Shown one piece after another: positions 12,161 through 62,368 of a DNA stretch of 64,000 nt. Location: NCBI RefSeq assembly GCF_030144855.1, contig NC_082721.1, positions 43,400,001 through 43,464,000 of the forward strand. The letters run 5' to 3'. Position 1 is the first letter of the stretch. Every line of letters begins with the position of its first letter. The notes under the pieces are model-generated. The model saw nothing but the letters and a program-made list of their open reading frames with translations, had not been told where the DNA came from and ran no database searches. Origin of the DNA: Hypanus sabinus (Eukaryota). The position numbers and the translations under genes are program-made.

Positions 12161-15100
12161 GACAAGCTTATGTTTGTGGCATATGTTTACCTGTTGGAAG
12201 TATTTTCGAAGCTGCAAATGCACCTGTCAATAGTAAACAGTGCATCGTCATGTCTGAGTTTCTAACATTCATTGGAAGCATTCCTTGAGTTTCTACCTGG
12301 CATTCGCAAATTAATAATGACTCTCTCTGAAGAAGAGTCAAGCTTTGCTATAGGCTGTCAACAAGAAATAGCTAATTTGGTATTCTGTGTGAAATGGCTT
12401 TCACATTTCCCTGCCTGAAATGAAACTGTCATAGACGCAATAAAAGATTTTCCAATTCCAAGTGAGGACAACTATATCAGCCTCTGAATCAGAATGTCAC
12501 AAAAATGCATTGGAATCTTTGTACTCAAGACTAGCTGCAAGACTGGATAGAGGAAAGAAAAGACTGGCGAAACTTGGTAATTCCTACAACATGAAAAGTG
12601 ACATTCGTGTCTTTATCATGGCTTCTGACATCAGGCATGCTGTTATGCTACTCAAGGAGAGTGACTCACAGTAATTAATGATGAAACTTCAATGGTTATT
12701 TGCTATCCCAGAACATAGCCAGAGACCTGCTATCTCTCGCAGCAGCTTGTTGAAAGCTTCCTCTCCTTCGTTGCTTAATCAGTGGGTGCACCTTGACTGT
12801 TCAGAATAGATAGGAAATGTGTTGGAAAGCTCCATGAAGAAAAAACTCATAAAGGAATTCTCATAGGCTGAGACATTCAAGCAATGAACCTCATAAAGAA
12901 AATCGAGGTCCAGAAAAAAAACATTAATAGAAAGAATGTTCGGTTTGGCTCATTTGTCATTGTTGTTGAAATTCTTCCTTCCAAGAAGGAGCCTTTACAG
13001 ATCCACCACGTAACAAAGTTCTACAAATATATGATCATCAAGCGACCCTCATTATCAATGAAGATACTAATACAGATAATTTGGCATCGCTAGCTGAGTA
13101 ATGACACATGACTGCCAAGACTCCAAATAAACAGACGCAAACAAAATATAGGAAATGTTCTCTCTTGGTAGCCTTTCAAATAATCTGCTCCCATGGAAAA
13201 GGTAAATCGGAGTCTGCAGCATCTGGAATTAGTTCTTTGTCACAGAATGATTTTGTATTGGGCTCCAGGGGAAAAGAATACATGAGGAGGCAAATTGTTG
13301 GTCAGTGTATGACCTCATCAGCACCTGCACCTGCCCTTCCAAATTAGGCTCTATGAGCATTTCACTGTGTTTCAACAGGAATGCTATCAGGTGATAACAG
13401 GTATGTTCATCATTTAAGGGCAGTGTAGAAGTCTATGATAACAATGGTGAAATTGACAAGTTTTTCATGAAATCAGTATACAGTACTGATGCATTGTCAA
13501 TGTAATGGAAAAATTTGGGGATGGATGCCTGAGTAGGTTTTCAAATAAGAACTGACCCACATAGCCAACAAAAACAGAGGCATAGCTAGGCCCATGTGAG
13601 TACATATGATTATGAGCTTCTTGAGTGTGTTGAAGCTGTTCTCATCCAAACAACCGGACAGCATTCCATCACATAACTGATTTGAGCTTTGTAGGTGGTG
13701 GACAGGAATGCTTAGGAGGTGAGTTAATGCCTGGGGTATGAAACTCACAGTGCCAAAAGCTTCAGTTCCTACTCTGTCTACCTGTGACTGCACTTTCATT
13801 TAAACTGGTACTCTAAGACACCACTGTTCAACAGGTCTTCCCAGAATGCTGCCATTTATGTGAAAGTCCAACCAGATTTGATCTTGCAAAATGCAATGCC
13901 TTGCCCTTATACAAATTAAACTCCATTTGACATTCTCCATCTCCCAGTAATTTATAATGACCTTCTTCATTGTCTATCTACTACACCACATATTTTACTG
14001 TCAGCTGCAAACGTATCAATCATGTCTTGTATGTTCTTATTCAGATTGTTGATAGAGATGCCAAACATCAATGGATCCAGCATCATCCCCCAAGGCCATT
14101 ACCATTAGTAATGGGAACCAGATGCGAAAGAATTATCCACCTTGAATGCTCCCTCTGCTTTTTTTTTCATCAAGCCAATTCTGCCATCAATTTGATAGTT
14201 CTTACTGTTTCCATGTGTTACATCCTTCCAGAGCAGCCTAACAAATGAACATTAAAGATTTTCAGCAGATCACACAAATCCCATCTATGGCCTTGTCCTT
14301 ACTGTCTTTCAGATACTGCATGATAAAAAAATCTCAATCAAATTGATAAGACATGATCTCCCATGTATAAAGCCATGCCAATGCCTCTAATCAACCTATG
14401 TGTGGAGGGTCACGGCCTGAAATGTCGACTATACCCTTTTCTGTCAATGCTTCTTGGCCTGCTGAGTTCTTTTAACATTTTGTGTGTTCTGCTTGGATTT
14501 CCAGCTTCTGAGATTTTCTCTTTTTCATGTTTTTCTAGATGTGTGCATATCTTACCCCTCAGAATGTTCTCTGGTATTTACCTGCCCCAGATGTTAGAGT
14601 AACTGGTCTATAGTTCCCAGTACCCTTTGCCATCCTTTTTCTGTACATGCACAATATTTGCTACCATCCAGACCCTTACCAGCACTTGACTGTGGCAGAC
14701 AATGAGACAAATATCTGAACAAGGGCTGCTAATTTCTTCCCCAGCCAACCACTTTGTTGTTGGATATAGCTGGCCTGGCCCTAAGGATCTGTCAGCCTCC
14801 ATACTTCTTAGAAAATATAGCAAAGATAGATCTTTGCAGTTCTATAACCCACTAAACAAGAGAAGCCAGCTCATTGAATAGATCTGTGGCTGCGACTGGG
14901 CAGATCTTCAGTGGAAACCTGACAATGGATTACATTAAAAAAGTGGAGTTCAGACCAAGACTCTGTTACTGTGACCTGAATCAATGGAGTGGTCCTATGG
15001 ACTGGTCCTGTCCCCATCACCAGTGTTCTTTTGCTCAGAGAGATTGATAAACAGACTCAGGTCATGAGGACACGATCTATGTGAGAACATGTTTAGTGAC

Positions 15101-15817
15101 CACGTTTGTTTCTAATGCCAATGAACATAGCCTTAAATTTCACTGATGCATATGTATGCATTTCTCAATTCCACTCTGACCCCAGCTGCAGGTTTCTCTT
15201 GTCACTTGCTCAACCCTTCAACACACTCAGGGCTGATTTGTTCTTGGCCTCAACTTCACCAAGACCTATGTTCCCTGCACAACATCAACTGTTTAAAGAG
15301 CATGAACTAGTTCAGACACAAGTATATTCAATGTCCACTCCTCCATAGCTCTGAGGTGGAGAATGCCACAGGTTCTGGAGCCCTGAAGAAGAGAAATCCT
15401 TGCCCAGCTTCTACATTACTGGGGCATCCTTTATTATGAAATTGTTTTGCTCAGGAGAGACTCTGGTATCTGGCAGTGAGATGTCCTGTCAGCATCTATT
15501 CCTTCCCTGCTCCTATATCATCAGTCCTTATGAAATGTCTAAATTGCCTGTTTCTATCATGATTCCATCATTTCATACTGGTAGCTGAATTATAAGCACT
15601 TTTATTCAACACTGTGTCTGTATTGAAATAAACCAAAATATGTAAAAAAATTGTAATATTGCCATAATCCCAACAGCTGAACACTGAACACAGGACCTGA
15701 AAGCTCCAGCATACTCAGGTCAGATATGTTTTGGCACCAGAATATTATCATGAGCATAATTTTATAAATGGCTCCACCTTTAGCAGTGGAGAGGTTCGCT
15801 CCCATGAAGATAAAGGG

Positions 15818-16060
15818 GCAGCATGGTTGTAAAGTGATATGTACAAAGTTTTACTGGTTACCTGGGTTGACGTCCTGATGCTGGCTGTATGGAGCTTGTA
15901 TGATCTCTCCAGGACTGCATGGGTTTCCTCAGCGTGATCCAATTCCCACCCAAGTCAAAAGACGTCTGGGTTGGAAGGTCATTGTAAATTCACGTGTGAT
16001 TTTGCTCAGGTTAAATTGATAGGGTGCTGTATGGGATGGTTTGAATGGCATGTAATGTAT
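15818..16060 (+). mobile_element. tRNA-derived SINE (HE1/SacSINE-like), degenerate; mirrored at about 56290-56540
   Basis: ggcagcatggt...gctgtatggagcttgtatgatctctcc...gggtttcctc core. Confidence 0.55.
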
Positions 16061-16089
16061 GAGAGGGCCAACTCCACACTATATCAAAA

Positions 16090-16225
16090 ATAAATAATAC
16101 ATAACTAAATAGATAGCTAGATAAAAAGATCAATAAATAAATAGACACACAGATTAAAAAATAAACAATCAGACAGATCAATAAACAGATAGATAGACAG
16201 ATAGATAAATAAACAAACAAGGAAA
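16090..16225. repeat. Degenerate (GATA/GACA)n repeat; mirrored at about 56150-56270
   Basis: atagatagacagatagataaataaac runs. Confidence 0.75.
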
Positions 16226-18774
16226 TAATGAGAATGGTGCTGTGGGTTCATCTCTCTATCATAAATGTGACAGTTCATTTTTCACAAGACTGTGCTCCAG
16301 GAAAGAAATCCACCTAACCAGACTCTTTTAGCAAAGAGGGAGGTGATGTCACACTGGCCCTTCCATCAGGGAATTCACATTCGAGTATCATCATCCTTAC
16401 ACCAAACTCTTAATGCTCCTCATCTGGAGTGACAATTCACAGAATTATCTGTGGACAAATAAAAGAATAATGTTAATGAATATCTTATCTTGAATAGTTT
16501 ACCTACTAACTCAGCCTTGCTTTAGATTATAGTGAGTGATGACCAGAAATGATTATTTTGTAAAACTTGACATTCAATTTGAGGAACTGATAAATTTTTA
16601 AGTATATTTGAAAAAAAAAATCGTGTTTAATACAGGAAGCTATGACGATGGCAAATATGGGTCATTATATAGTTACTCCATTCTCAGTTGTGTTTGTCAC
16701 ATTCAAGCAAATTTTCACTAGCTCAAAGCCTGGAACGGGTCAAAATTCATCAGTTCACCTATTCTACAGTACCTCTTGTCTATTGATAAAACTTTGGATC
16801 AAAATCTCTCAATGAAAGACTCCTACCCTCTGGGTTGGTGACAGGAAATGTGGCTGCCTTTCACATAATGATCTTGTTTAAATCGCACATTTTACCTGCG
16901 GACATGGCCACGCTGTGGTTTCCAGACCCAGAGATCCAGGAACCAAAATCTAGCTTCATTTCTGTTGTTCCTCAGATATGCCCAGGCTGAATTCTTCAAT
17001 CGAATAAAGGCATACAGGAAGTAGCCTCCAATACTACTTTCAGATCAGTTGTCACTGAAAGGAGCGTCAATATCCCATTTTACACATCTGCCCTAAGTTA
17101 AAGCTCTCAGTTTCATTCTTTGTGTGTTCAAGTTTTCCAACTTTCTCTGAGGGCATTGGGAACAACAGCTCCCTGAGCCAGTGATCCCTCTTCCCAGTGG
17201 AAGCCAGACAGAGACAGTGGGCAGACGTGGATAAGTGAACCCATCTAGCCCAGTTCTGCCCTCCTCGCACAGTGAGCCATCCAGGTCATTCACATTGAAC
17301 AGGTATACGGACATGCTAATGAGCAGGGACACCTATTGTAGTTACTGCTTTCTCTATGGAAGATCAATTGATCTATTCTGAAAAATGAACCGAACAGTGG
17401 ACGCCATTGTTATATAGATCTCAGTAAATCATTATAGTAAAAGCAGATTCTATGATATGATCTCTATCGACACATTGATGGATATGGTCAATGAAATACA
17501 TTTCTCTTGAATCAGTTGCCCATTTATTGCATTCAGTTCGAATCAACCCATGTTACGAAGGATGTGGCAGCATTGGAATGGGTGCAGAAAAGGTTTACAA
17601 GATGCTGCCTAAAGTTGAGGGCAGGTACTACATGCAGTTTTTGGGAAAATCTTGTATATTTTTTGCATGATAAAAGTGTGATACCAGATGGCATGTCTTT
17701 ATGATAAGAGGGGTAAGTTCAAAGGGGATTTGCAGGGCATATGTTTACGCGAAGAGTGGTGAGTGCCTCGGCTGCACTGCCAGAGTTGGTTATGGTGTCA
17801 AATATGATAAAAGCATCGAAAAGATTCTTAAGTAGGCACATGAATTTGCAGAGAAGGAAAACATATGAACTATACATATGCAGAAAGTAATTGTTTTTTC
17901 CAGCATTAATTAACATTGTGACTCAGAAATCCTGTCCTGTTCTGTACTATTCTCTCTCTTCCTTTCCTATAATTACAGAATCCAAATTTCTCCATTTCTG
18001 TTCTCCTTGAGATACTATGGATTCACAGATTTATCACCTGGGCTTGCATTATCCAGTGGATTATCATGAATGAATGTTAATGATGCAGTGTGCTTTGCAT
18101 TATTCAGGAGAATTGCTCCACTGGAGTTAATAGTTTAATTATGTTTTCCCAGAAACTAATATCCTGAATGTCCTTGCAGACCAAAATATATACACAGCAA
18201 CCAGCACAGTTCTCAATGTAATAATCAGCTGTGAAATCTGTCTTTCTGCAGATTGCTACAGAGTGGAGTAGTTAAATCTGCAGTCATTCCTCTACCCTCA
18301 CTGACTCTCAAATTGTTATCCCACAATTGATCAGCTCAGTGGTTTGTACAGCAGTCACATTGGGGAAATGGTGCAGAATAAAGCAGAGCTCACTAGTTCC
18401 AGGGCTGCCCAGTTTCCTGCTTATTCTCATCTTCTTCCTACAGAAACAGTGGGCCATGCATTGAGAGTATCAGCACAAGGATGCCTCGGTAGCATGTGAG
18501 GAGTGTGATACAGTGCTGATATCTCACGGCTTCAGTGACCTAGATTTGATCCCAAGCTTGTCCATGTGAAGTTTTTATGTTCTCTCTGTGACTACTTGAG
18601 TTTCCCACTGATGCTCTATTTTTCTTGCACTGTGCAGATACTTTCCAGTAATGTTTCCCTTTGTGCATTGAAACAACAGACAAATCAAAGGATATTTGAT
18701 GGCATGTATTTGCCAGGACATCTAGCATTGTAATGTCAGGATTGTTTCCTGAACCACGAGATTGCGAGTGCAAG

Positions 18775-21700
18775 AAGAGCATGATCACGTATATTAATGT
18801 GTGGCTGAGAAGCTCCTGTAATGGGCATGGCTTCAGTTTCCTTGATCACTGGGGCCTCTTCTGGCAGAGGTATGATTTGTAGAAAAAGGATGGGTTGCAC
18901 CTGAACCCAAAGGGGTCCAATATGCTAGGGGGCACATTTAATAGAGCTGTAAGGGAGGGTTTAAACTAAGTTGGCAGAGGGATGGAAACTGGATTGATAG
19001 GGTTGAGGGAGTGGAAAACAGAAATAAATCAAAGATAGCATGCAACAGAGATTATAGAAAGAACAGGCAGGAGATGGGGCTTAATCAGAGCCAGTGGTCA
19101 AATTTACAGGGCAATAGAGGCATGGTGCAGGTAAAACAGAAAGCAGCAAATCCTGGACTGAAAGTGTTATATTTGAATGCACGCAACATATGGACGATCT
19201 TGAAATTCAGTTACAGATTGGCAAATGTGATGTCGTGGCCATCTCTGAAACTTGGCAAAAGGATGACTGCCATTGGGAGCTGAACATCCAAGGATATATG
19301 ATGTATCAGAAAGATACTCTGCTGACCCACGACTGTGCTGCAACACACAGCTGGAACCATATCATCAAGTTCTGCGATGACACCACGGTGGTGGGTCTCA
19401 TCAGCAAGAACGATGAGTCAGCTTATAGAGAGGAGGTGCAGCGGCTAACGTACTGGTGCAGAGCCAACAATCTGTCTCTTAATGTGAACAAACCAAAAGA
19501 GATGGTTGTTGACTTCAGGAGGGCATGGAGCGACCACTCCCCGCTGATCATCGACGGCTCCTCGGTAGAGATCGTAAAGAGCACCAAATTTCTTGGTGTT
19601 CACCTGACGGAGAATCTCACCTGGTCCCTCAACACCAGCTCCATAGCAAAGAAAGCCCAGCGGCGTCTCTACTTTTTGCGAAGGCTGAGGAAAGTCCATC
19701 TCCCACCCCACATCCTCGCTACATTCTACAGGGGTTGTATTGAGAGTGTCCTGAGCAGCTGCATCACTGCCTGGTTCGGAAATTACACCCTCTCGGATCG
19801 CAAGACCCTGCAGCGGATAGTGAGGTCAGCTGAGAAGATCATCGGGGTCTCTCTTCCCGCCATCACGGACATTTACACTACACGCTGCATCCGCAAAGGA
19901 AACAGCATTATGAAGGACCCCATGCACCTGTCATACAATCTCTTCTCCCTCCTTCCTTCTGGGATAAGGCTCCGAAGCATTCGGGCTGTTACGACCAGAG
20001 TCTATAACAGTTTCTACCCCCAAGCTATCAGACTCCTCAATACCCGAAGCCTGGACTGACACCTTGCCCTACTGTCCTGTTTATTATTTATTGTAATGCC
20101 GGTACTGTTTTTGTGCACTTTATGCAGTCCAGTGTAGGTCTGTAGTCTAGTATAGCTTTCTTTGTGTTTTTTTATTATGTAGTTCAGTCTAGTTTTTGTA
20201 TTGTGTCATGTAAACCATGGTCCTAAAACACATCTCATTTTTACTATGCACTGTACCAGCAGTTATGGTCGAAATGGCAATAAAAGTTGACTTGACTTGA
20301 TTTGACTTGAAATAGTTTAGTAGACAGAGGGGCTGGTGTAGCTCTGTGTGATAGAAATAATATTAGATCATCAGAAAGAGATGACATAGGATTGAATTGT
20401 CAAGTCTCTATGGGTTGGCAAGGGTAAATGGACCCTAATGACAGTTGTATACTGGCCTTCAAACAGCAGCCGGGAAGTGGATTTGAAATTACAGCAGGAG
20501 ATGGAAACAACATGTCAGAAAGGCAATGTCATGATAATTGTTGGGGATCTTAACATGAAAGTAGATTGGAAAAACCAGGTCAGTACTGGACCTCAAGAGA
20601 AAGAATTTGTAGAATGTCTGATGGATGGCTTTTTTAAACAGCTTGTTGTTGTTGTTGAATCACATAAAGTTGGATTACAGGTACAACAGTTTATTAAGAA
20701 GGCAAACAGAATGATGGCCTTCATTGCTAGAGGAAATGAAATCAAGAGCAGGGAAGTCATGCTGCAACTATAGAGGGTACAGGTGAGGCCACACCTGGAG
20801 TACTGTGTGTAGTTCTGTACTCCGTACTTGAGGAAAGATATCCTGGCTTTGGTGGCAGTGCAGAGGAAGCTCACCAGGTTGATTCCAGGGATGAAGGGAT
20901 TAATCTATGAGGAGAGATTGAGTCACCGGGGACTAACACACTCTGAAGTTTGGAAGAATGAGAGGGACTCCTATAGAAGCATACAAACTTTTGAAAGGTA
21001 TAGATAAGATAGAAGTAGGAAAGTTGTTTCCATTCGTAAATGAGACTAGAACTAAGGGATATTGCCGCAAGATACAGAGGAGATGATTTAGGATGGAGAT
21101 GAGCAGAAACTGTGTTTCTCAGAGAATGGTGAATCTGCAGGATTCTCTGCCCAAGGAAACTGTTGATGCTTCTTCACTATGTATATTTAAGATACAGTTA
21201 GATTGTTACATAGTGGGGGAATTAAGGGTTATGGGGAAAAGGGAGGTCGGTGAAGCTGAGTGAAATTTGAGAGGGAATAATGAAATCCAATGTGTTGCTA
21301 TTTCAGTGGAATAAAGGAAATTACAATGGCGTGAGAGGGGAACTGGCTGAAGTTGACTGGAAAGGGACATGTGTAGGAAGGACAGCAGAACAGCAATGGC
21401 TGGAGTTTCTGCAAACAATCAGGGAAATGCAAGACAGATATATTCCATTAGAAGAAATTTTCAAAGGGAAGAAGGACACTACTGTGGCTGACAACTGAAG
21501 TCAGAGTCAAAGTAAAAGCAAAAGGGATGGCATACAAGGAAGCCAGAGCAAGTGGGAAGATAGAGGATTGGGAAGCTATTAAAAACTTGCAGAAGGAAAC
21601 TAAGAAGGTCATCAGGAAGGAAAAGGTGAATAATGAAAGGAAGATGATGACTAATGTCAAAGAAGATAATAAAAGCTTTTTTAAATATATAAAGGGTAAA

Positions 21701-23470
21701 AGAGAGTCAAGGGTTGATATGATGCTGGAAATATTGTAATGAGAGATGCAGAGATGGCAGAGGAACTGAATGCATAATTTCATTAGTCTTCACAGTGGAA
21801 GGCATCTGCAGTATACTGGACATTCAAGAGTGTCAGGAAAGTGAAGTTTCTGCAGTGAAAATTACAACTGCAAAGGTGCTTGGGAAGCTTAATGGGCTGA
21901 CGGTGGATAAATCTCCTAGTCCTGATGGAATGCACACTTGGGCTCTGAAGGAAGTAGCTGGTAAAATTGTGGAGGCATTAATGATGATCTTTCAAGAATA
22001 TAGTTTCTGTCTTTGTACCAGATGACTGGAAAATTGCAAATGTAACTCCACTATTTAACAAGGGTGGGAGGCAGCAGATAGGAAACTATAGACATGTTAG
22101 CCTGATATCAGTGTTTACGAAGTTGTTGGAATTGATTGTTAGGGATAAGGTTATGGAGTACCTGGAGGCACATGACAAGATAGGTCAAAGCCAGCATGGT
22201 TTCTTTAAAGGAAATTCCTGCCTGACAAACCTACTGTAATTCTTTGAGGAAATTACAAGCAGGGTAAACAAAGGAGATGTAGTAGATGTGGTGTACTTGG
22301 ATTTTCAGAAAGCCTTTCACAAGGTGCAACACATGAGGCTGCTTAGCAAGATCAGAGCCCATTAAATTACAAGGAAATTACTAGCATGGGTGGAGCATTG
22401 GCTGTTTGGTAGAAAACAGAGAGTAGGAATAAACAGATCCTATTCTAGCTGGCTGCCGGTTACCAGTGGGGTTCCACAGGGGTCAGTGTTGGGACCACTG
22501 CATTTACATTGTATGTCAATGACTTGGACGACGGTATTAATAGATTTGTGGCTAAATTTGCCGATGATACAAAGATAGGTGGAGGAGCAGGTAGTATTGA
22601 GGAAACAGAGAGCCTGCAGAGAGACTTAGATAGTTTAGGGGAATTTGCAAAGAAGTGGCAAGTGAAATACAATGTTGGAAAGTGAATTGTCATGCACTTT
22701 GGTGGAAGAAATAAAAGGGCAGACTATTATTTAAATGGGGAGAGATGCAAAGGGACTTGGGAGTCCTTGTGCAAGATACCCCAAAGGTTAACCTCCAGGT
22801 TGAGTCAGTTGTGAGGAAGGTGAATGCAATGTTGGCATTCATTTCTAGACTTATAGACTATAAGAGCAGTGATGTGGTGTTGAGTCTCTATAAGGCTTTC
22901 GTGAGATAACACCTGGAGTATTGTGTGCTGTTTTGTGCTCCTTATTTCAGAAGGATATACTGATATTGAAGTGGGTTCAGAGAAGATTCACGAGAATGAT
23001 TCCAGGAATGAAAGGGTTACTGTATGAGGAACGTCTGTCAGCTCTTGGGCTGTATTCTCTGGAGTTCAGGAGAATGAGGGGGGATCTTATAGAAACATTC
23101 TGAATGTTAAAAGGTCAGAACAGATTAGATATCACAAAGTTATTTCCCATGATAGCGAATTATAGGACAAGAGGGCATGACTTCAGGATTGAAGGACATC
23201 CATTTAGAACTGAGGTGTGGAGGAATTACTTTAGTCAGAGGGTGGTAAATCTGTGGAATTTGTTGCCACGAGCGGCTGTGGAGGCCAAGTCATTGGGTGT
23301 ATTTAAGGCAGAGATAGATAGGTTCTCGATTAGCCAGGGCATCAGAGGGCATGGGTTGAAGGCTGGGGAGTCAGATGACTGGAAGATTTGGATCAGCCCA
23401 TGATGGAATGGTGAAGTGGATTTGATGGGCCAAATGTCCTACTTCTGCTTCCATATCTTATGGTCTTATG
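18775..23470 (+). mobile_element. CR1 LINE (ORF1 SGNH-esterase C-terminus, EN, RT, 3'UTR) with nested CR1 3' piece (about 20660-21262) and a Rex1 insert
   Basis: DHWGLFW..YDL.KKDGLHLN; LKVLYLNARNI; DVVAISETW; SPDGMH..LKEVA; TSGVPQGSVLGPL; LEYCV.FC.PYFRKDIL. Confidence 0.92.
19317..20310 (+). mobile_element. 5'-truncated Rex1/Babar LINE, young, open frame to 20059
   Basis: THDCAATHSWNHIIKFCDDTTVVGLIS...[13 protein letters not shown]; (cttga)n tail; short ata TSD; empty site in the right arm at about 55490. Confidence 0.92.
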
Positions 23471-48707: not shown

Positions 48708-48710
48708 ACT

Positions 48711-51366: not shown

Positions 51367-51488
51367 ACTAAGTGTATAACTGTATGGCTCTGTAATTAAA
51401 AGAAAAAGCTTGGGTATTGTGTTAGATTAAAAATCACGTAAGACTCTGTACAACTCCGTTTTTAACCGCTGGTAAAAAACGTTTTTTT

Positions 51489-51498
51489 AGAGGAGAGG
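51489..51498 (+). promoter_or_regulatory. Polypurine tract
   Basis: agaggagagg immediately before the 3' LTR. Confidence 0.8.
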
Positions 51499-52312
51499 TG
51501 TTATGAATGCACCACAGCTCTGAGGGGCCGAAGGGGCAGGAGCAGCCCCTCCTTCCGGAGAATCGCAAGAGCACTATTAATTCGGGTCTCGGACCCAGGC
51601 AAATGAGAGACAATGTAACGGTTCTGGCCAGGGCTCTTAGAGACACCTGTGCTGAGGGCATGACCCTGCTACGTGACAGCTACCTTGGATATGGACACCC
51701 TCGGGCAATGTGGGGGTGGGGATTGCATCACCCTACTTTGATGGACATCTACAACTCTGCAAGTCAAGATAAAAGGGGACTGCAGGAGGCGGTACCCCAG
51801 AGAGATGCACCAGAAGGACTCGATCGCTCAACGCTCCCGTGATAGCTGGAAGCCAATCAAAAAGCCATGTGCGCTCCGTAACTTCTCTGCCTGGGGAGCA
51901 GGTGGCTGATAATACCAAGAAGGACTTCGAACTAATAACAGGGAAACAACGGTCCCCTGATTCAACAGTGTTGCTTTGTCAAAGACCCGGGCAAGTTTTG
52001 TCGTTTCTCCTCAAACACTGAAACACGATTCCCCAAAAAAGACTGAAGCCTGCAGACTTCTGAGTGACTTTTATATTTCCAACGGACAATATATTATCCC
52101 CTAGACAACAGTCAAGATTATTTCTTAATGATGATTATTGCTATACCCGTGCTTTAGATTGAGTTTTGCTGATGTATACGTTCTGAATGTTTGTATTAAC
52201 CTTACTTTTGTGCCCCCTTTTATGAATAAAACCATTCGAAAATAGTGCCATCAGACTCCAACTGACCTCTCTATCTTTGCTGGTGAGCTATCCAGTTATG
52301 GCATACGTAACA
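51499..52312 (+). repeat. 3' LTR
   Basis: Direct repeat of 47900-48707. Confidence 0.95.
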
Positions 52313-52329
52313 ATGCCAATTCTGTTATG

Positions 52330-55300
52330 CTAATATATAAGAACATAAGGCCAAAAGATATGGAAGCAGAAGTAGGACGTTCGGCCCATTGAGTCCACTT
52401 CACCATTCCGTCATGGGCTGATCCAAATCTTCCAGTCATCTGACTCCCCAGCCTTCAACCCATGCCCTTTGATGCCCCAGCTAATAGAGAACCTATCTAT
52501 CTCTGCCTTAAATACACCCAATGACTTGGCCTCCACATCCGCTTGTGGCAACAAATTCCACAGATTTTCCATCCTCTGACTAAAGTAATTCCTCCACACC
52601 TCAGTTCTAAATGGACATCCTTCAATCCTGAAGTCATGCCCTCTTGTCCTAGAATTCCCTATCATGGGAAATAACATTGTGATATCTAATCTGTTCTGAC
52701 CTTTTAACATTCAGAATGTTTCTATGAGATCCCCCCTCATTCTCCTGAACTCCAGAGAATACAGCCCAAGAGCTGACAGACATTTCTCATACAATAACCC
52801 TTTCATTCCTGGAATCATTCTCGTGAATCTTCTCTGTACCCTCTCCAATGTCAGTATACCCTTTCTAAAATAAGGAGCACAAAACAGCACACAATACTCC
52901 AGGTGTTATCTTACGAAAGCCTTATAGAGACTCAACATCACATCACTGCTCTTATATTCTATACCTTTGGAAATGAATGCCAACATTGCATTTGCCTTCC
53001 TCACAACTGACTCAACCTGGAGGTTATCCTTTAGGGTATCTTGTACAAGGATTCCCAAGTCTCTTTGCATCTCTTCCCATCTAAATAAGTCTACCCATTT
53101 ATTTCTTCCACCAAAGTGCATGACCATTCACTTTCCAGCATTGTATTTCATTTGCCACTTCTTTGCCCATTCCTCTAAACTATCTAAGTCTCTCTGCAGG
53201 CTCTCTGTTTCCTCAACACAACCCGCTCCTCCATCTATCTTTGTATCATCGTCAAATTTAGCCACAAATCCATGAATTCCACAGTCCAAGTCATTGACAT
53301 ACAATGTAATGCAGTGGTCCCAACGCCGACCCCTGTGGAACCCCACTGGTAACTGGCAGCCAGCCAGAATAGGATCTGTTTATTCCCACTCTCTGTTTTC
53401 TACCAAACAGCCAATGCTAGTAACTTCCCAGTAATTTCATGGGCTCTTATCTTGCTAAGCTGCCTCAAGAGTTGCACCTTGTCAAAGGCTTTCTGAAAAT
53501 CCAAGTACACCACGTCTACTATATCTCCTTTGTTTACCCTGCTTGTAATTTCCTCAAAGAATTACAGTAGGTTTGTCAGGCAGGAATTCCCTTTCAGGAA
53601 ACCATGCTGGCTTTGACCTATCTTGTCATGTGCCTCCAGGTACTCCATAACCTCATTCCTAACAATCAATTCCAACAATTCGTAAACACTGATATCAGTC
53701 TAACATGTCTATAGTTTCCTATCTGCTGCCTCCTACCCTTTTTAAATAGTAGAGTTACATTTCCAATTTTCCAGTCATCTGGTACAAAGACAGAAACTAT
53801 CTATTCTTGAAAGATCATCGTTAATGCCTCCACAAATTTACCAGTTATTTCCTTCAGAACCCAAGTGTGCATTCCATCAGGACTAGGAGATTTATCCACC
53901 GTCAGCTCATTAAGCTTCCCAAGCACCTTCTCAGTCGTAATTTTCACTGCAGAAACTTCACTTTCCTGACACTCTTGAATGTCCAGTATACTGCAGATGT
54001 CTTCCACTGTGAAGACTGATGAAAATATGCATTCAGTTCCTCTGTCATCTCTGCATCTCTCATTACAATATTTCCAGCATCATATCTACCCTTGGCTCTC
54101 TTTTACCCTTTATATACTTAAAAAAGCTTTTATTATCTTCTTTGATATTAGTTGCCAGCTTCCTTTCATTATTCACTTTTTCCATTCTGATGACCTTCTT
54201 AGTTTCCTTCTGCAAGTTTTTAATAGCTTCCCAATCTCTATCTTCCCGCTAGGTCTGGCTTCTTTGTGTACCCTCTGTTTTGCTTTTACTTTGACTCTGA
54301 CTTCAGTTGTCAGCCGCAGTAGTGTCCTTCTACCCTTTGAAAATATCTTCTAATTTGGAATATATCTGTCTTGCATTTCCCTGATTGTTTGCAGAAACTC
54401 CAGTCATTGCTGCTCTGCTGTCCTTCCCACACATGTCCCTTTCCAGTCAACTTCAGCAAGTTCTCCTCTCATGCCATTGTAATTTGCTTTATTCCACTGA
54501 AATACCAACACATTGGATTTTACTTTTCCTTCTCAAATTTCACTCAGCTTCGCTGACTTGCCTTTTCCCCATAACCCTTAATTCCCACACTATGTAAAAA
54601 TCTAACTGTATCTTAAATATACATAGTGAAGACGCAGCAACTGTTTCCCTGAGCAGAGAATTCTGCAGATTCGCCACTCTCTGAGAAACACAGTTTCTGC
54701 TCATCTCCATCCTAAATCTTCTACCCTGTATCTTTCGGCAATATCCCTTAGTTCTAGTCTCATTTACGAATGGAAACAGCTTTCCTACTTCTATCTTATC
54801 TGTCCCTTTCAAAAGTTTGTATGCTTCTCTAAGAGTCCCTGTCATTCTTCTGAACTTCAGAGAATGTAGGCCCAGGTGACTCAATCACTCCTCATAGGTT
54901 AACCCCTTCATCCCTGGAATCAACCTGGTGAGCTTCCTCTGCACTGCCACCAAAGCCAAGGATATCCTTCCTCAAGTACGGAGAACAGAACTACACACAG
55001 TGCTCCAGGTGTGGCCTCACCAGTACCCTCTATAGTTGCAGCATGACCTCCCTGCTCTTGAATTCATTTCCTCCAGCAATGAAGGCCATCATTCTGTTTG
55101 CCTTCTTAATAAACTGTTGTACCTGTATTCCAACTTTATGTGATTCAACAACAACAACAAGCTGTTTAAAAAAGCCATCCATTATACATTCTACAAATTC
55201 TTTCTCTTGAGGTCCACTACTGACCTGGTTTTTCCAATCTACTTTCATGTTAAAATCCCCAACAATTATCATGACATTGCCTTTCTGACCTGTTGTTTCC

Positions 55301-55841
55301 ATCTCCTGCTGTAATTTCTAATCCACTTCGCGGCTGCTGTTTGAAGGCCAGTATACAACTGTCATTAGGGTCCATTTACCCTTGCCAACCCATAGAGACT
55401 TGACATCTTCAATCCTATGTCATCTCTTTCTGATAATCTAATATTATTTCTTTCTCATAGAGCTACACCAGCCCCTCTGCCTGCTAAACTATCTTTCTGA
55501 TACATCATATATCCTTCGATATTCAGCTCCCAATGGCACTCATCCTTTTGCCAAGTTTCAGAGATGGCCCCAACATCATATTTGTCAATCTGTAACTGAA
55601 TTTCAAGATCGTCCATATGTTGCGTGCATTCAAATATAACACTTTCAGTCCAGGATTTGCTGCTTTCTGTTTTACCTGCACCACGTCTCTATTGCCCTGT
55701 AACTTTGGCCACTGGCTCTGATTAAGCCCCATCTCTTTTCTGTTCTTTCTATAATCTCTGTTGCACGCTATCTTTGATTTATTTCTGTTTTCCTCTCCCT
55801 CAACCCTATCAATCCAGTTCCCATCCCTCTGCCAAATTAGT
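52330..55841 (-). mobile_element. CR1 LINE, right-arm copy of 18965-23470 without the Rex1 insert
   Basis: Minus-strand ORFs mirror those of the left arm (LKVLYLNARNI; METTGQKGNVMII; LKGQNRLDIT). Confidence 0.92.
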
Positions 55842-58800
55842 TCACTATAATCTAAAGCAAGGCTGAGTTAGTAGGTAATCTGTTCAAGATAAGAAATTCA
55901 TTAACTTTATTATTTTATTTGTCCACAGATAATTCTGTGAATTGTCAATCCAGACAAGGAGCATTAAGAGTTTGGTGTAAGGATGATGATACTCGAATGT
56001 GAATTCCCTGATGGAAGGACCAGTGTGACATCACCTCCCTCTTTGCTAGAAGAGTCTGGTTAGGTGGATTTCTTTCCTGGAGCACAGTCTCGTGAAAAAT
56101 AAACTGTCACATATATGATAGAAAGATGAACCCAGAACACCATTCTCATTATTTGCTTGTTTGTTTATTTATCTATCTGTCTATCTATCTGTTTGTTTAT
56201 TTTTTAATCTGTGTGTCTATATATTTATTGATCTTTTTATCTATCTATTTTGTTAGGTGTTATTTATTTTTGATATAGTGTGGAGTTGGCCCTCCCGTAC
56301 ATTACATGCCATTCAAGCCATTCCATACAGCACCCTATCAATGTAACCTGAGCAAAATCACACGTGAATTTACAATGACCTTCCAACCCAGATGTCTTTT
56401 GACTGTGGATGGGAACTGGATCACGCTGACGAAACCCAAGCAGACCTGGAGAGATCATACAAGCTCCATACAGCCAGCATCGGGAAGTCAACCCAGGTAA
56501 CCAGTAAAACTTTGTACATATCACTTTACAACCATGCTGCCCGATTATCTTCATGGGAGCGAACCTCTCCACTGCTAATGCTGTAGCCATTTATAAAATT
56601 ATGCTCATGATAATATTCTGGTGCCAAAACATATCTGACCCGAGTGTGCTGGAGCTTTCAGGTCCTGTGTTCAGTGTTCAGCTGTTGGGATTATGGCAAT
56701 TGTACAATTTTTTAAAACATATTTTTGGTTTATTTCAATACAGACACAGTGTTGAATAAAAATGATTGTAATTCAGCTACCAGTATGAAATGATGGAATT
56801 GTGATAGAAACAGGCAATTTAGACATTTCATAAGGACTGATGATATAGGAGCAGGGAAGGAATAGATGCTGAGAGGACATCTCACTGCCAGATACCAGAT
56901 TCTCTCCCGAGCAAAACAATTTCATAATAAAGGATACCCCAGTGATGTAGAAGCTGGGCAAGGATTTCTCTTCTTCAGGGCTCCAGAACCTATGGCATTC
57001 TCCACCTCAGAGCTATGGAGGAGTGGACATTGAATATACTTGTGTCTGAACTAGTTAATGCTCTATAAACAGTTGATGTTGTGCAGGGAACATTGGTCTT
57101 GGTGGAGTTGCGGCCAAGAACAAATCAGCCCTGAGTGTGTTGAAGGGTTGAGCAAGTGACAAGAGAAACCTGCAGCTGGGGTCAGAGTGGAATTGAGAAA
57201 TACATACATATGCATCAGTGAAATTTAAGGCCATGTTCATTGGCTTTAGAAACAAACGTGGTCACTAAACATGTTCTCACACAGATTGTGTCCTCATGAC
57301 CTGAGTCTGTTCATCAAACTCTCTGAGCAAAAGAACACTGGTGATGGGGACAGGACCAGTCCATGGGACCACTCCTTGCTGTCCCATTATTTATTCAGGT
57401 CACAGTAACAGAGTCTTGGTCTGTGTGTAATGCATTGTCGGGTTTTCCAATGTATGCCCAGTCGCAGCCACAAATCTTTTCAATTAGTTGGCTTTTCTTG
57501 TTTTATGGGGAATAGAACTGCAAAGATCCATCTTTGCTGGATTTTCTAAACTGTATGGAGGCTGACAGATCCTTAGGGCCAGACCAGCTATATCCAACAA
57601 CAAAGTGGCTGGCTGGAGAAGAAATTAGGAGCCCTTGTTCATATATTTGCTTCATTGTTTACCACAGTCTGGTGCTGGTAAGGGTCTGGATGGTAGCAAA
57701 TATTGTGCATGTACAGAAAACGGATGGCAAAGAATACTGGGAACTATAGACCAGTTAGTGTAACATCTGGGGCAGGTAAATACCAGAGAACATTCTGAGG
57801 GGTAAGATATGCACACATCTAGAAAGACATGAAAAAGAGAAAATCTCAGAAGCTGGAAATCCAAGCAGAACACACAAAATGTTAAAAGAACTCAGCAGGC
57901 CAAGTAGCATCGACAGGAAAGGGTATAGTCGACATTTTAGGCCGTGACCCTCCACACATAACTTGATCAGAGGCTTTGGCATGACTTTGTGCATGGGAGA
58001 TCATGTCTTATGAACTTGATTGAGAATTTTTTTATCATGCAGTATCTGAAAGCCAGTGAGGACAAGGCCATAGATGGGATTTGTGTGACCTGCTGAAAAT
58101 CTTTAATGTTCATTTGTTAGGCTGCTCTGGAAGGATGTGTCACATGGTAACAGTAAGAACTATCAAATTGATGACATAATTGGCTTGATCAAAAAAAAAG
58201 CAGAGCGAGCAATCAAGGTGGACAATTCTTTCTCGGTCTGGTTCCCATTACTAATGGTATGCCTTGGGGGATGATGCTGGATCCATTGTTGTTTGGCATC
58301 TCTATCAACAATCTGAATAAGAACATACAAGACATGATTGATACGTTTGCAGCTGACAGTAAAATATGTGGTGTAGTTGGTAGCCAATGAAGAAGGACAT
58401 TATAAATTACTGGGAGATGGAGAATGTTAAATGGAGTTTAATTTGTATAAGGGCAAGGCATTGCATTTTGCAAGATCAAGTCTGGTAGGACTCTCACATA
58501 AATGGCAGCATTCTGGAAAGACCTGTTGAATAGAAGTGTCTTAGAGTACCAGTTTAAATGAAAGTGTAGTCACAGGTAGACAGAGTAGGAACTAAAGCTT
58601 TTGTCACTGTGGGCTTCATTCCTCAGGCATTAACCCACCTCCCAACTCAGCATTCCTGTCCACCACCTACAAACCTCAAATCAGTTACGCGATGAAACAC
58701 TGTCCGGTTGTTTGGATGAGAACAGCTTCAACACACTCAAGAAGCTCATATTCATAAGTACTCACATGGGCCTAGCTATGCCTCTGTTTTTGTTGGCTAT

Positions 58801-59283
58801 GTGGGTCAGTTCTTATTTGAAAACCTACTCAGGTGTCCATCCCCAAATTTTTCCATTACGTTGACAATGCATCAGTACTGTATACTGATTTCATGAAAAA
58901 CTTGTCAATTTCACAATTGTTATCATAGACTTCTACACTGCCCTTAAATGATGAACATATCTGTTATCACTTGATAGCATTCCTGTTGAAACACAGTGAA
59001 ATGCTCATAGAGCCTAATTTGGAAGGACAGGTGCAGGTGCTGATGAGGTCATACACTGATCTACAATTTGCCTCCTCATGTATTCTTTTCCCCTGGAGCC
59101 CAATGCAAAATCATTCTGTGACAAAGAACTAATTCCAGATGCTGCAGTCTCTGATTTACCTTTTCCATGGGAGCAGATTATTTGAAATGCTACCAAGAGA
59201 GAACATTTCCTATATTTTGTTTGCGTCTGTTTATTTGGAGTCTTGGCAGTCATGTGTCATTGCTCAGCTAGTGATGCTGAATT

Positions 59284-61625
59284 TTTAAAAAAATATTAGT
59301 TATTTATTAAATTTTAGAAATTACAAAGAATAAATGTGATAATAATAAGAAAAATAATATTAACCCTCCCCCCTCCCCTTAACCCTCCCCCCCTTAACCC
59401 TTATCTAAAGAAAAAAAAAAGAAAAGGAGAAAAATTGCCTGGATATCGGAGGATCCCCACATGCTCCATGGAGTTCAAAATAATTTTGATATTTATTTTT
59501 ACTTTCCCCAATTACTATAATTTTATCTTCAAAGGACCTATGTATTTAATCCTATTTTTTGTAAGTATGGAAACCAAATTTTCAAAAATATATCATATTC
59601 ATTTCTTAGATTATACATCATTTTTTCAAGTGGAATACAACTATGTATTTCATTATTCCAATGATACATAGTTAAATCTAAGTCCCTTCGATATCTCCTA
59701 ATAAAAATAATAGTGGACTATGTGGAAGTTATACTCCAATAATTTGTTCCAATAACAGTCTTACATTTATCCAAAATGGTTGAATTTTAAAACAAGACCA
59801 AGTAGAATGTAAAAAAGTACCAATTTCTTGATTACATCGAAAACATTGGTCAGACATATTTGAATTTAATCTATCTTTTCATTTTTTTAATATATGTTAA
59901 AACTCTTTTTCTTTTCACAGATCCGTTAATTCCATTAACATTAAAACTTAATAAATTAAGTAAATTAATCATTCATAGTACCTTGGGAGCTCTTTAAAAT
60001 TCTCCATGTTGCTATGAGTCTCTCCCTAACCATCCAGGCAAAAACGAAGAAAAATAGAAGAAAGATAACTAATATATAAGAAAAAAAAACAAAATACCCC
60101 CCCCACTAATGTTGTGAATAGAAAGAACACAACATTACTCCCCCCCCATTTTACGGGTCATCGCAATCACCATGATTGTACACTTGAAACTCGCAGCCAT
60201 CAATCAAGAGCTCCTCCAGCTCCCCCGCAAAAAAACGGAAGTATATTAGTGAAGAAACAAAAGACAAATAATTAATGTCTCTATTCCCAATTAATACTCC
60301 TCGACTATGTTTTCCCTTATAAATGTCCATCAAGTCCAATCTTGTTTCAGTCTTCATCATTAGTCCATTTCATTTCTATAATTCTTTACTCCTCTTCATG
60401 GACATGAGGTAATTCTTGTACAAATTCCTCCGCTTTCCAGTAGTTAACGAAGAAACTTCTTTCTCCATTATCCAGGAAAATTATCAATTTTGCTGGGTAG
60501 CTCAATAAAAAATTATAGCCCTTTTCCCATAAAGATTTTTTCACTGGATTAAATTCCTTCCGCCTCTTCAGAAGATCGTAACTTATGTCTGGATAAAAAA
60601 AAACTCTTTTTTGTTCTATTATCAATGGCCCATTTCTCTTGAGTAGCTGCGTTCAAGATCATTTCTTTATCTTGGTACCTTAAGCATTTTATCAAAATTG
60701 ATCTTGGATTTTGATCTAGTTGAGATCTTGGTCTTAAAGCTCTGTGTGCCCTTTCAATTTCAATTACTTGACTTCCTTCTTTCATTTCCAAAATCTTCGG
60801 AATCCATTCTTGAAAGAATTTTATTGGATTTTCTCCCTCTGTACCTTCCATAAGACCAACAATTTTATTATTATTATTTTGTCTACTAGAATTCTCAAGC
60901 GCATCCATTTTTTCCAACATGCATTTTCTTTCTGTTGTCCAGGCAAGATTATTCACTTCTATCTTGTCTATTCTTTCAGTGTTTTCATCCACTTTTACTT
61001 CCATCTCTTTAACTTTATTATCCATCTTCTTTTGTTTTTCCAGCACATTATCAAGTGTATTCTGTATCCTTCTTATATCTGTTCTTACAACTTTTAAATC
61101 ATTCTTCATATCTGTTCTTACAGCTTTAAATTCATTCATCATATATATCAGGATATCTTTTATGTCTCCTTTAATCTCTTCCTTCTTTTCCTCTTCTTCT
61201 TCCTCTGAATCTCCCAAAGAGTCTATTTCTACTTCCTATCCACTTCCAATTTCATTTCCAGCCGTAGTTGAGATTTGTGGTTTTGTTAATATCTGTTCAT
61301 GCGTACTTCGACCGCCGACATTGCTGCAGCTTCTCGTCCCGCATCATCGGAAGTGCCATGCACTTCGCCTGGAGGAGATCCAACTTGAGTCCGAGGCTTT
61401 GCCGAGATGGTTAGGCCTTTCTCCCCGCTGATTTGCGCAGTCTTCGAAGTAGTAGCTTTCTTCTGTTTCGGTTTAGGAGCCATATCAAAAGATAATCCTG
61501 AATTACTTATAAATAGTTTCTAATAGATATTTGTTAACTCGTCTTCATTTAAAACTTATTTCATTACTTTTTACGAGGGAGCTGGTTTCCCAACGTCTCG
61601 ACCCTACGTCATCACGTGACGTCCC
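59284..61625 (-). mobile_element. L1-derived element C: ORF1 (about 60386-61483, disrupted), ORF2 mostly deleted
   Basis: 16-bp TSD ctagtgatgctgaatt at 59268-59283 and 61626-61641; ORF2 start MINLLNLLSFNVNGINGSVKRKRVLTYIKKMK jumps at about 59872 to RLNSNMSDQCFRCNQEIGTFLHSTW; empty site at about 13075-13092. Confidence 0.92.
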
Positions 61626-62368
61626 CTAGTGATGCTGAATTATCTGTATTAGTATCTTCATTGATATATGAGGGTCACTTGAATGATCATATATTTGTAG
61701 AACTTTGTTAGGTGGTGGAAATGCTATGGGTAGATCTGTAAAGGCTTCTTCTTGGAAGGAAGAATTTCAACAACAATGACAAATGAGCCAAACCGAATAT
61801 TCTTTCTATTAATATTTTTTTTCTGGACCTCAATTTTCTATATGAGGTTCACTGCTTGAATGTCTCTGCCTATGAGAATTCCTTTATGAGTCTTTTCTTC
61901 ATGTAGCTTTCAAATAGGTTTCCTATCTACTCTGAACAGACAAAGTGCACCCATTGATCAAGCAATGGAGGAGAGGAAGCTTTCAACAAGCTGCTGGGAG
62001 AGGTAGCAGGTCTCTGGCTATGTTCTGGGATAGCAAATAACCATTGAAGTTTCATCATTAATAACTGTGAGTCATTCTCCTTGAGTAGCATAACAGCATG
62101 CCTGATGTCAGAAGCCATGATAAAGACATGAATGGCACTTTTCATGTTGTAGGCATTACCAAGATTCACCAGTCTTTTCTTTCCTCTATCCAGTCTTGCA
62201 GCAAGTCTTGAGTACAAAGATTCCAATGCATTTTTGTGACATTCTGATTCAGAGGCTGATATAGTTTTTCCTCACTTGGAATTGGAAAATCCTTTATTGT
62301 GTCTGTGACAGTTTCATTTCGAGCAGGGAAGCGTGAAATCCAGATCACACAGAATACCAAATTAGCTA

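What the first reader, a model, noticed from the sequence alone, without database searches (positions are those of the whole stretch)
12369..62368. Hidden inverted segmental duplication with 10.75 kb arms around a 14 kb spacer
Seen in sequence: 12369-30789 is the reverse complement of 44843-62368 across unique DNA and shared TE junctions. Removing arm-specific segments leaves 10745 bp and 10751 bp. Manual comparison gave about 10% divergence at 25141-25376 and about 5% elsewhere, so this is an old duplication and not an assembly artefact. Inference: inverted arms of this size can seed inversions of the spacer and gene conversion, and often mark duplicated gene clusters.
Basis: seen in the sequence. 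Interest (0 to 1): 0.72.

Follow-up and report, generated by a model that had tools for sequence, protein, structure and literature searches.

The report
Old inverted duplication in antibody locus
A stretch of about 11 kb of transposon-rich DNA, starting inside a dead copy of the USP35 gene, sits twice in opposite orientation around a 14-kb spacer in a stingray antibody light-chain region; it is a real, old and apparently functionless duplication of an ordinary kind.

Summary
12369-30789 and 62368-44843 align in reverse complement in six colinear blocks: 10,688 aligned columns, 93.9% identity, 36 small indels, around a 14,053-bp spacer. Five arm-specific segments break the blocks. Four are later transposon insertions with target-site duplications. 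One is probably a 2.4-kb deletion in the right arm.

The arms are not all "unique DNA". About a third is one decayed, very high-copy LINE. The outer 0.4 kb at least, and probably about 1.4 kb, is a dead USP35-like deubiquitinase gene piece. A third, older copy (about 71% identity) lies in the spacer. The scan had already found dead USP35 copies 184 kb away in the same locus.

No antibody exon or other live gene was found in the arms. The left arm is the more complete one at the outer edge, and the right arm at the inner edge, so both edges were reshaped.

Contigs from four related organisms show only one copy of the single-copy core. That copy has neither the LTR nor the L1 insertion.

Divergence is uneven: one 350-bp patch has 3 mismatches. 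The longest perfect match is 129 bp, so present-day inversion or widespread gene conversion is unlikely. Verdict: a genuine, ordinary segmental duplication of low interest.

The parts
12369..30789 (+). Left arm (18,421 bp, of which 10,763 bp is shared with the right arm)
   Evidence: six colinear reverse-complement blocks, 93.9% identity.
44843..62368 (-). Right arm (17,526 bp, of which 10,771 bp is shared)
30790..44842 (.). Spacer, 14,053 bp. It holds a near full-length L1-like LINE, an older USP35-like copy and CR1-like fragments.
12254..12806 (+). Dead USP35-like gene piece in the left arm: end of the Usp38-like N domain, Cys box and start of the catalytic domain. It has several stop codons and runs across the outer edge 12368/12369. 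It probably continues to about 13726, where the three-copy homology ends.
   Evidence: tblastn of P0001 covers 12254-12469, E 6.6e-14. Pfam PF21246 hits 12266-12415, E 3.9e-4, 20 bits, below the curated cut-off of 27. PDB 5TXK (USP35) residues 3-56 and 58-101 match, E 5.7e-6 and 1.7e-7.
61930..62369 (-). Right-arm copy of the USP35-like piece. Its homology starts exactly at the arm edge. The position aligned with the catalytic Cys (Ser in the 5TXK chain) reads Tyr.
   Evidence: tblastn covers 62369-62241 and 62184-62113. 5TXK residues 3-101 match, E 7.9e-23.
38956..40014 (-). Third, older USP35-like copy in the spacer, about 71% identical to both arms and in the orientation of the right arm.
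   Evidence: 5TXK residues 50-91 match, E 1.6e-8.
37966..38488 (-). Second colinear block of the older paralogue. It is homologous to left-arm 18200-18709 at 73%.
16536..18963 (+). Left-only segment, most likely deleted from the right arm. It has no target-site duplication, and its homologue lies colinear in the older spacer copy. By my unconfirmed reading of the translation, the B3+B4 LINE continues 5' into it.
18964..19316 (+). Block B3: 5' part of the shared decayed LINE. By eye the translation looks like the start of its endonuclease; no search confirmed this.
   Evidence: Translation. In the right arm it is contiguous with B4.
19317..20311 (+). Left-only insertion: 5'-truncated CR1-like LINE 3' piece with a short tandem-repeat tail and a 3-bp ATA overlap at the junction.
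   Evidence: Pfam RVT_1 (weak, E 0.007) and PF09004, E 4e-20. Junctions.
20312..23501 (+). Block B4: body of the shared decayed LINE (endonuclease then reverse transcriptase), a very high-copy family.
   Evidence: Pfam Exo_endo_phos_2 and RVT_1 hits are weak but colinear. Contig word depth is 2x10^4 to 1.9x10^6.
26064..30298 (+). Left-only insertion: L1-like LINE carrying reverse transcriptase, with a 12-14-bp target-site duplication.
   Evidence: Pfam RVT_1, E 3.8e-16. Junctions. A contig of organism D stops matching at 26063 (record 32).
47900..52312 (+). Right-only insertion: internally deleted Ty3/gypsy-type LTR retrotransposon. LTRs are 47900-48708 and 51499-52313, ends TG..CA, 4-bp duplication GCAT.
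   Evidence: Direct repeat. LTR pair 94.9% identical. Integrase_H2C2, rve and Integrase_p58_C domains. Junctions. The site is empty in contigs of organisms A, C and D.
59284..61625 (-).
   Evidence: Junctions. Homology to 877-2762 and 34757-36603.
30790..36613 (-). Near full-length L1-like LINE. Its poly(A) end abuts the inner edge of the left arm and it has no target-site duplication.
   Evidence: RVT_1 hits.
44757..44933 (-). Old CR1-like fragment that runs through the inner edge of the right arm, 91 bp inside and 86 bp outside.
   Evidence: Aligns with 3835-3657, E 1.9e-14.
24009..24358 (.). Low-divergence patch between the arms: 3 mismatches in 350 columns against 21 expected.
   Evidence: 0 of 2,000 permutations reached it.

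Best explanation
This is a genuine, old inverted segmental duplication with no detectable function. It lies in transposon-rich DNA between two sigma light-chain genes of a stingray. A segment of at least about 13 kb was copied in reverse orientation some 8-14 kb away. The segment began inside an already dead USP35-like gene copy and contained a decayed full-length LINE.

Shown: since then the two copies drifted apart to 6% substitution divergence and 36 small indels. The right arm gained a Ty3/gypsy LTR element and an L1-like element. The left arm gained an L1-like LINE and a CR1-like fragment, and a full-length L1-like element now sits at its inner edge.

Inferred: the right arm lost 2.4 kb by deletion, and the L1 at the left inner edge replaced adjoining arm DNA. 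The LTR element entered soon after the duplication, because LTR divergence is 5.1% against 6.1% for the arms. The copying mechanism was probably replication template switching or break repair; I found no diagnostic junction.

The pair belongs to a wider family of USP35-pseudogene-bearing duplicons produced as the light-chain locus expanded.
For: The reverse-complement alignment is colinear through both single-copy and repeat DNA. Contig depth shows that 23600-24200 is single-copy. Four arm-specific segments carry their own target-site duplications of 15, 4, 12-14 and 3 bp. The LTR pair is 94.9% identical against 93.9% for the arms. USP35-like homology is present in both arms and in the spacer copy, with stop codons in the copies and a Tyr at the catalytic-Cys position in the right copy. 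The left arm continues the USP35-like sequence 115 bp beyond the outer edge. The right arm continues a CR1-like fragment 86 bp beyond the inner edge. CpG observed/expected is 0.16, and CpG sites are 39% diverged against 5.4% elsewhere, the pattern of neutral decay in a methylated genome. No Ig exon pattern, no Rfam hit and no tRNA was found. Contigs from four other organisms show the ancestral empty state at the LTR and L1 insertion sites.
Against: I could not see beyond the window, so I cannot say whether the arms are each other's closest relatives among the USP35-bearing duplicons of the locus. I also cannot say whether the outer edge in the right arm is a true breakpoint or a large insertion whose far side lies past base 64000. 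No reads of the window's own species were available, so the four edge junctions are not independently confirmed. Four related organisms show only one copy of the single-copy core. That needs either a lineage-specific duplication or a loss in those organisms. Divergence along the arms is more uneven than a uniform neutral process gives (chi-square p about 2e-5).
Confidence: 0.85

Rival explanations
1. The two arms are not sister copies. Each is a copy of another USP35-pseudogene-bearing duplicon elsewhere in the large sigma light-chain locus. In that case the 6% divergence dates an older split and not a local inverted duplication.
For: A third USP35-like copy lies in the spacer. Related organisms show only one copy of the core.
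Against: In those related organisms the core 23600-24200 has single-copy depth, so this part is not a widespread duplicon there. The arms share 10.7 kb, including identical junctions between old transposons and unique DNA. The only other copy visible in the window is far more diverged (29%).
Confidence: 0.2
2. The structure is a working palindrome. The arms exchange sequence by gene conversion and flip the 14-kb spacer by recombination, which could change the relative orientation of neighbouring light-chain DNA.
For: One 350-bp patch (24009-24358) has 3 mismatches where 21 are expected (0 of 2,000 permutations). The arms exceed 10 kb.
Against: Overall identity is 93.9% and the longest perfect tract is 129 bp. 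Divergence tends to rise towards the spacer (Spearman rho 0.31, p 0.02), whereas another palindrome noted in this genome shows it falling to zero at the centre. The low-divergence patch overlaps a repeated motif (depth about 3,000 at 24200-24399). The listed rows show few differences from the related organisms there, so constraint or a low local mutation rate fits equally well. The spacer holds no gene that I could find.
Confidence: 0.08
3. It is an assembly artefact: a diverged second haplotype was joined in backwards next to the first.
For: No run of the window's own species was available to confirm the junctions. None of seven samples (four of organism A by word share; A, B, C and D by laid contigs) shows a left-arm-type copy.
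Against: Divergence is 6%, with five kilobase-scale differences and separate transposon insertions in each arm. That is far above the nucleotide diversity of about 0.2% reported for a shark (PMC10587355). The window has no N runs. Both arms have unique, non-duplicated flanks, and the left arm continues the USP35-like sequence into its flank.
Confidence: 0.03

Closest known systems
Segmental duplications (low-copy repeats) of vertebrate genomes, inverted intrachromosomal type
   Same: Over 1 kb (here 10.7 kb aligned) at over 90% identity. It includes non-repeat DNA, lies within tens of kb of its partner, carries a pseudogene passenger and has transposons at its edges.
   Different: It lies in a cartilaginous-fish antibody light-chain locus. 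Both edges were secondarily reshaped. It is much more diverged than the duplications that drive recurrent rearrangement in humans.
Large near-identical palindromes of mammalian sex chromosomes, kept alike by arm-to-arm gene conversion
   Same: Inverted arms of more than 8 kb around a unique spacer.
   Different: Arm identity is 94%, not above 99%. No live gene is present, and there is no general sign of conversion.
Dead intron-less USP35 copies reported by this scan 184 kb downstream in the same locus (note s1-172403)
   Same: The same parent gene family (USP35/USP38), dead, and multiplied by duplication within the light-chain locus. Here the N-domain end, the Cys box and the catalytic-domain start are contiguous without an intron.
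   Different: I could not compare the sequences directly. The copies here are partial, and one pair is inverted.
Cluster-type immunoglobulin light-chain loci of sharks and rays (many V-J-C clusters produced by repeated duplication; PMC4279169, PMC5192425, taken from their abstracts and from general knowledge)
   Same: The setting matches: earlier notes place the window between two sigma light-chain genes, 15 kb before it and 11 kb after it, in a region with many such genes.
   Different: The duplicated unit seen here holds no V, J or C exon.

Membership tests
Segmental duplication | At least 1 kb aligned at 90% identity or more | tested here: met
   10,688 aligned columns at 93.86% identity.
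Segmental duplication | Not explained by high-copy repeats alone; includes single-copy DNA and shared repeat/unique junctions | tested here: met
   23600-24200 has single-copy contig depth next to a LINE with depth 10^4-10^6. The blocks are colinear.
Segmental duplication | Both copies exist in the organism, not only in the assembly | not testable with these tools
   No run of the window's own species was served. The best holders have 0.18-0.28 of the words.
Gene-conversion-maintained palindrome | Arm identity above about 99% | tested here: not met
   93.86% overall. Only one 350-bp patch is near-identical.
Gene-conversion-maintained palindrome | Live, usually tissue-specific genes in the arms | tested here: not met
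   Only transposon reading frames and a dead USP35-like piece were found. Short exons could have been missed.
Recombination substrate for recurrent inversion | Long perfect-match tracts, a few hundred bp (threshold taken from general knowledge) | tested here: not met
   The longest perfect run is 129 bp.
USP35/USP38 family, pseudogene | Sequence homology to the Usp38-like N domain and to the USP catalytic domain, in the right order | tested here: met
   The best match is E 7.9e-23 to PDB 5TXK residues 3-101.
USP35/USP38 family, pseudogene | Disabled: stop codons and loss of the catalytic cysteine | tested here: met
   The left copy has stops at four places within 12254-12810. In the right copy, Tyr aligns with the catalytic position, which is Ser in the 5TXK chain.
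USP35/USP38 family, pseudogene | Processed (intron-less) origin | tested here: inconclusive
   The N-domain end, the Cys box and chain residue 101 are contiguous. I had no full-length reference or parent-gene exon map.
Ty3/gypsy LTR retrotransposon (right-arm insertion) | Two LTRs with TG..CA ends, a short target-site duplication and an integrase of the chromovirus/Ty3 type | tested here: met
   (Integrase_H2C2 E 6e-21, rve E 2e-13, Integrase_p58_C E 8e-8).

The most novel reading that the evidence does not exclude
The inverted copy is specific to this species' lineage. Four related organisms carry only one copy of the single-copy core. If so, the pair would be a recent-lineage rearrangement inside an expanding antibody light-chain locus. 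It could still flip the 14-kb spacer or exchange sequence, as the 350-bp near-identical patch might suggest. That would give a datable example of how ray light-chain loci grow by inverted, not tandem, duplication.
Probability: 0.12. Interest if true: 0.4.

Novelty: new member of a known kind. Interest (0 to 1): 0.2.

Why it matters
It matters little on its own. It shows that the sigma light-chain region of this ray was built partly by inverted duplications of junk-rich units. A dead USP35-like gene serves as a convenient marker of duplication history: three generations of copies are visible in one window. Dated transposon insertions and the single copy in related organisms give a rough order of events. 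A chromosome-wide tree of these duplicons could help anyone reconstructing how cluster-type antibody loci expand. No functional consequence is shown.

Tried and rejected
1. I first read the right arm's outer flank, from memory, as the N-terminal part of a LINE reverse transcriptase running through the edge. I concluded from this that the right arm was the parental copy. The test contradicted it. A protein-atlas search gave only noise. The HMMER search of 1.84 billion proteins gave a single hit to a USP-domain protein. tblastn then showed the USP35-like homology crossing the left edge, not the right. The nature of 62369-64000 remains unknown, with no Pfam hit.

2. L1 3' transduction as the copying mechanism: rejected. 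There is no poly(A) at the right arm's outer end and no L1 sequence at its inner end.

3. A target-site duplication for the L1 at the left inner edge, with the arm left in or conceptually removed: none above chance.

4. Coding constraint in the 1.06-kb three-copy unit: no clear codon periodicity (89, 90 and 66 differences at the three positions). That fits pseudogene copies decaying neutrally.

5. Immunoglobulin V, C and J pattern scan of all reading frames: only two chance J-like matches.

6. Rfam and tRNA scans: nothing.

7. Pfam on about 90 reading-frame pieces: only transposon domains plus one Usp38-like_N hit.

8. PDB searches with pieces downstream of 12806: nothing. The extent of the pseudogene beyond that point therefore rests on the three-copy DNA homology alone.

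9. A phylogenetic reading of the contigs. The differences table is capped at 40 rows, so for the 778-bp contig of organism A I can only bound its distance to the right arm at 13-33 substitutions. That compares with 35 to the left arm and 42 between the arms. My first estimate, that the relatives are three times closer to the right arm, is not safe.

10. Absolute dating. The only direct elasmobranch mutation rate I found is 7e-10 per site per generation, with a wide interval (PMC10587355). It gives ages from tens to hundreds of millions of years, so I give no date.
Full report
**Observation.** A BLAST of the window against its own reverse complement returns six colinear blocks joining 12369-30789 to 62368-44843. 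I aligned each block globally.
- The arms share 10,763 bp (left) and 10,771 bp (right), giving 10,688 aligned columns.
- Identity is 93.86%, with 376 transitions, 280 transversions, K2P distance 0.064 and 36 indel events.
- The spacer, 30790-44842, is 14,053 bp.
- Sensitive searches found no further inverted homology outside or inside the arms. Only 1.6 kb of right flank is visible before the window ends.

**What breaks the arms.** Junction sequences explain the five arm-specific segments.
- Right arm, 47900-52312: an LTR retrotransposon. It has two LTRs of about 810 bp, TG..CA ends and a 4-bp duplication, and it keeps only integrase-region domains: Integrase_H2C2, rve and Integrase_p58_C. That places it in the Ty3/gypsy type.
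- Left arm, 26064-30298: an L1-like LINE with reverse-transcriptase frames and a 12-14-bp duplication.
- Left arm, 19317-20311: a 5'-truncated CR1-like 3' piece with PF09004 at E 4e-20 and a short-repeat tail.
- Left arm, 16536-18963: no duplication at its ends. A colinear homologue of its 18200-18709 part lies in the older copy in the spacer. By my reading of the translation, which no search confirmed, the old LINE shared by both arms continues 5' into it. I therefore read this segment as a 2.4-kb deletion in the right arm, not an insertion in the left. The original arms were then at least about 13 kb.

**What the arms are made of.**
- Blocks B3 and B4 (18964-19316 and 20312-23501) form one decayed LINE. 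Weak but colinear endonuclease and reverse-transcriptase hits occur in both arms.
- When public contigs of four organisms were laid on 20400-26390, this part had summed word depths of 2x10^4 to 1.9x10^6. By contrast 23600-24200 had depth 5-22, which is single-copy.
- The arms therefore contain real single-copy DNA, and the shared boundary between the LINE and that DNA is part of the duplication.
- No Ig V, C or J pattern, Rfam family or tRNA was found.

**A dead USP35-like gene at the outer end.** I had read the outer edge, from memory, as a LINE reverse-transcriptase motif. I tested that reading and it was wrong.
- A HMMER search of 1.84 billion proteins with the reading frame 62169-62402 (minus strand) gave one hit, P0001. 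It is a Callorhinchus milii USP-domain protein carrying Pfam Usp38-like_N and the start of UCH.
- tblastn of P0001 against the window aligns residues 72-144 to 12254-12469 at E 6.6e-14. This alignment runs straight through the left arm's outer edge.
- In the right arm the homology begins exactly at 62369.
- Pfam places the last 42 positions of Usp38-like_N on 12266-12415 at E 3.9e-4, 20 bits against a curated cut-off of 27.
- Matches to the solved catalytic domain of human USP35 (PDB 5TXK) are as follows:

| Copy | Window coordinates | 5TXK residues | E-value |
|---|---|---|---|
| Left arm | 12444-12671 | 3-56 | 5.7e-6 |
| Left arm | 12675-12806 | 58-101 | 1.7e-7 |
| Right arm | 61930-62271 (minus) | 3-101 | 7.9e-23 |
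| Spacer copy | 39830-40075 (minus) | 50-91 | 1.6e-8 |

- The left copy has several stop codons. In the right copy a Tyr aligns with the catalytic-cysteine position, which is Ser in the 5TXK chain. These are dead gene pieces.
- After finding this I looked up earlier notes. Another agent had reported about five dead, intron-less USP35 copies 184 kb downstream in the same locus. The arms therefore belong to a family of duplicons that multiplied as the locus grew.

**The edges.**
- Outer edge: the left arm is the complete one. The USP35-like sequence continues at least 115 bp into its flank. The right arm stops and is followed by unrelated GC-rich DNA of unknown nature.
- Inner edge: the right arm is the complete one. 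An old CR1-like fragment (44757-44933, matching 3835-3657, E 1.9e-14) runs 86 bp past the edge.
- The left arm's inner edge is cut off at 30789 by the poly(A) end of a near full-length L1-like element (30790-36613, minus strand). No target-site duplication could be found for that element.
- The simplest account is inference only. The left position is the parental one. The copy that became the right arm reached further inward than the present left arm does. The L1 insertion later removed the matching part of the left arm.
- I found no microhomology or other signature that identifies the copying mechanism. L1 3' transduction is excluded by the lack of a poly(A) tail at the right arm's outer end.

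**Relative timing.**
- The two LTRs differ by 5.1% +/- 0.8%, against 6.1% +/- 0.2% for the arms. The LTR element therefore entered the right arm fairly soon after the duplication.
- CpG sites are 39% diverged and non-CpG sites 5.4%, with CpG observed/expected 0.16. This is the pattern of neutral decay in a methylated vertebrate genome.
- I give no absolute date. The only direct elasmobranch mutation rate I found has a tenfold confidence interval and is per generation (PMC10587355).

**Unevenness along the arms.**
- Divergence is over-dispersed (chi-square p 2e-5). It tends to rise towards the spacer, with Spearman rho 0.31 and p 0.02 for all sites, but p 0.06 once CpG sites are excluded.
- One patch, 24009-24358, has 3 mismatches in 350 columns against 21 expected. 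None of 2,000 permutations reached that value.
- 30344-30543 reaches 16% divergence.
- The low patch could be a gene-conversion tract. It also overlaps a moderately repeated motif, and in the listed rows it shows few differences from the related organisms. Constraint or a low local mutation rate is therefore equally possible.
- The longest perfect match between the arms is 129 bp. This argues against efficient recombination today.

**Evidence from other organisms.** No public run holds either arm at near-identity. The best word shares are 0.18-0.19 for the left core and 0.24-0.28 for the right core. The window's own species is therefore not among the runs served.
- Contigs of four organisms (coded A-D) laid on the left arm show exactly one contig each over 23440-24246.
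- These contigs are uninterrupted at the LTR insertion site and lack the extra 4-bp duplication.
- They carry the right-arm state at both indels in the interval. Contig lengths equal the left length plus 3 plus 8.
- They carry the right-arm letter at 32 of the 39 listed positions where they differ from the left arm.
- A contig of organism D stops matching at 26063, where the left arm's L1 begins.
- The relatives thus show the ancestral empty state for both insertions, and only one copy of the core.
- The table of differences is capped. For the 778-bp contig of organism A, I can only bound the distance to the right arm at 13-33 substitutions. The distance to the left arm is 35, and the arms differ from each other by 42.
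- The relatives' copy is therefore somewhat nearer the right arm or about equidistant. Either the duplication arose around or after the split from these organisms, or they lost one copy. I cannot decide which.

**Comparison and verdict.** The structure meets the definition of a segmental duplication. It fails the criteria for a conversion-maintained palindrome (identity, live genes) and for an efficient recombination substrate (perfect tracts). It is a new example of a known kind, in a setting where repeated duplication is the rule: the cluster-type light-chain locus of a ray. Its suggestions that the structure marks a duplicated gene cluster or drives inversions are not supported by anything I could test. 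Interest is low.

Noticed in passing
window 12254-13726, 58631-62369 and 38956-40014: Three dead USP35-like gene fragments lie in one window: two at 94% identity to each other and one at about 71% to both. They could serve as markers for the duplication history of the sigma light-chain locus.
   Followed up: yes
window 24009-24358 (right arm 47385-47028): A patch of 350 bp has only 3 differences between the arms. It starts in single-copy DNA and runs into a moderately repeated motif. The listed rows show few differences from four related organisms there. It may be a conversion tract or a conserved element.
   Followed up: partly
window 8959-9954 and 36847-37922: Two GC-rich blocks in direct orientation are about 71% alike. 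Each holds its own tandem repeat: 68-bp unit at 9360-9489, and 59-bp unit in 4.1 copies at 95% identity at 37209-37449. No Pfam hit; nature unknown.
   Followed up: no
window 7143-7327 and 11597-11777: A pair of inverted repeats of about 185 bp (77% identity) lies 4.3 kb apart in the left flank. A reading frame at 6744-7310 gives a weak aspartyl-protease hit. This may be a decayed mobile element.
   Followed up: no
window 874-3107, 30790-36613 and 59284-61625: Three L1-like elements share the same G-rich 5' start. The full-length one lacks a target-site duplication.
   Followed up: partly
window 20400-23500: The decayed LINE shared by both arms belongs to an extremely abundant family in four related organisms. 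Summed contig word depth reaches 1.9 million in one 200-bp bin.
   Followed up: partly
window 62369-64000: The right flank is GC-rich (49%), has long open frames on both strands, no Pfam hit and no similarity to anything else in the window. I could not identify it.
   Followed up: partly
window 3137-3956, 17533-17885, 19317-20311, 41832-42526, 43596-44426 and 44757-44933: There are at least six fragments of CR1-like LINE 3' ends. They were recognised by homology to one another and, in one copy (19317-20311), by a Pfam PF09004 hit. Two lie in tandem just inside the spacer next to the right arm.
   Followed up: partly
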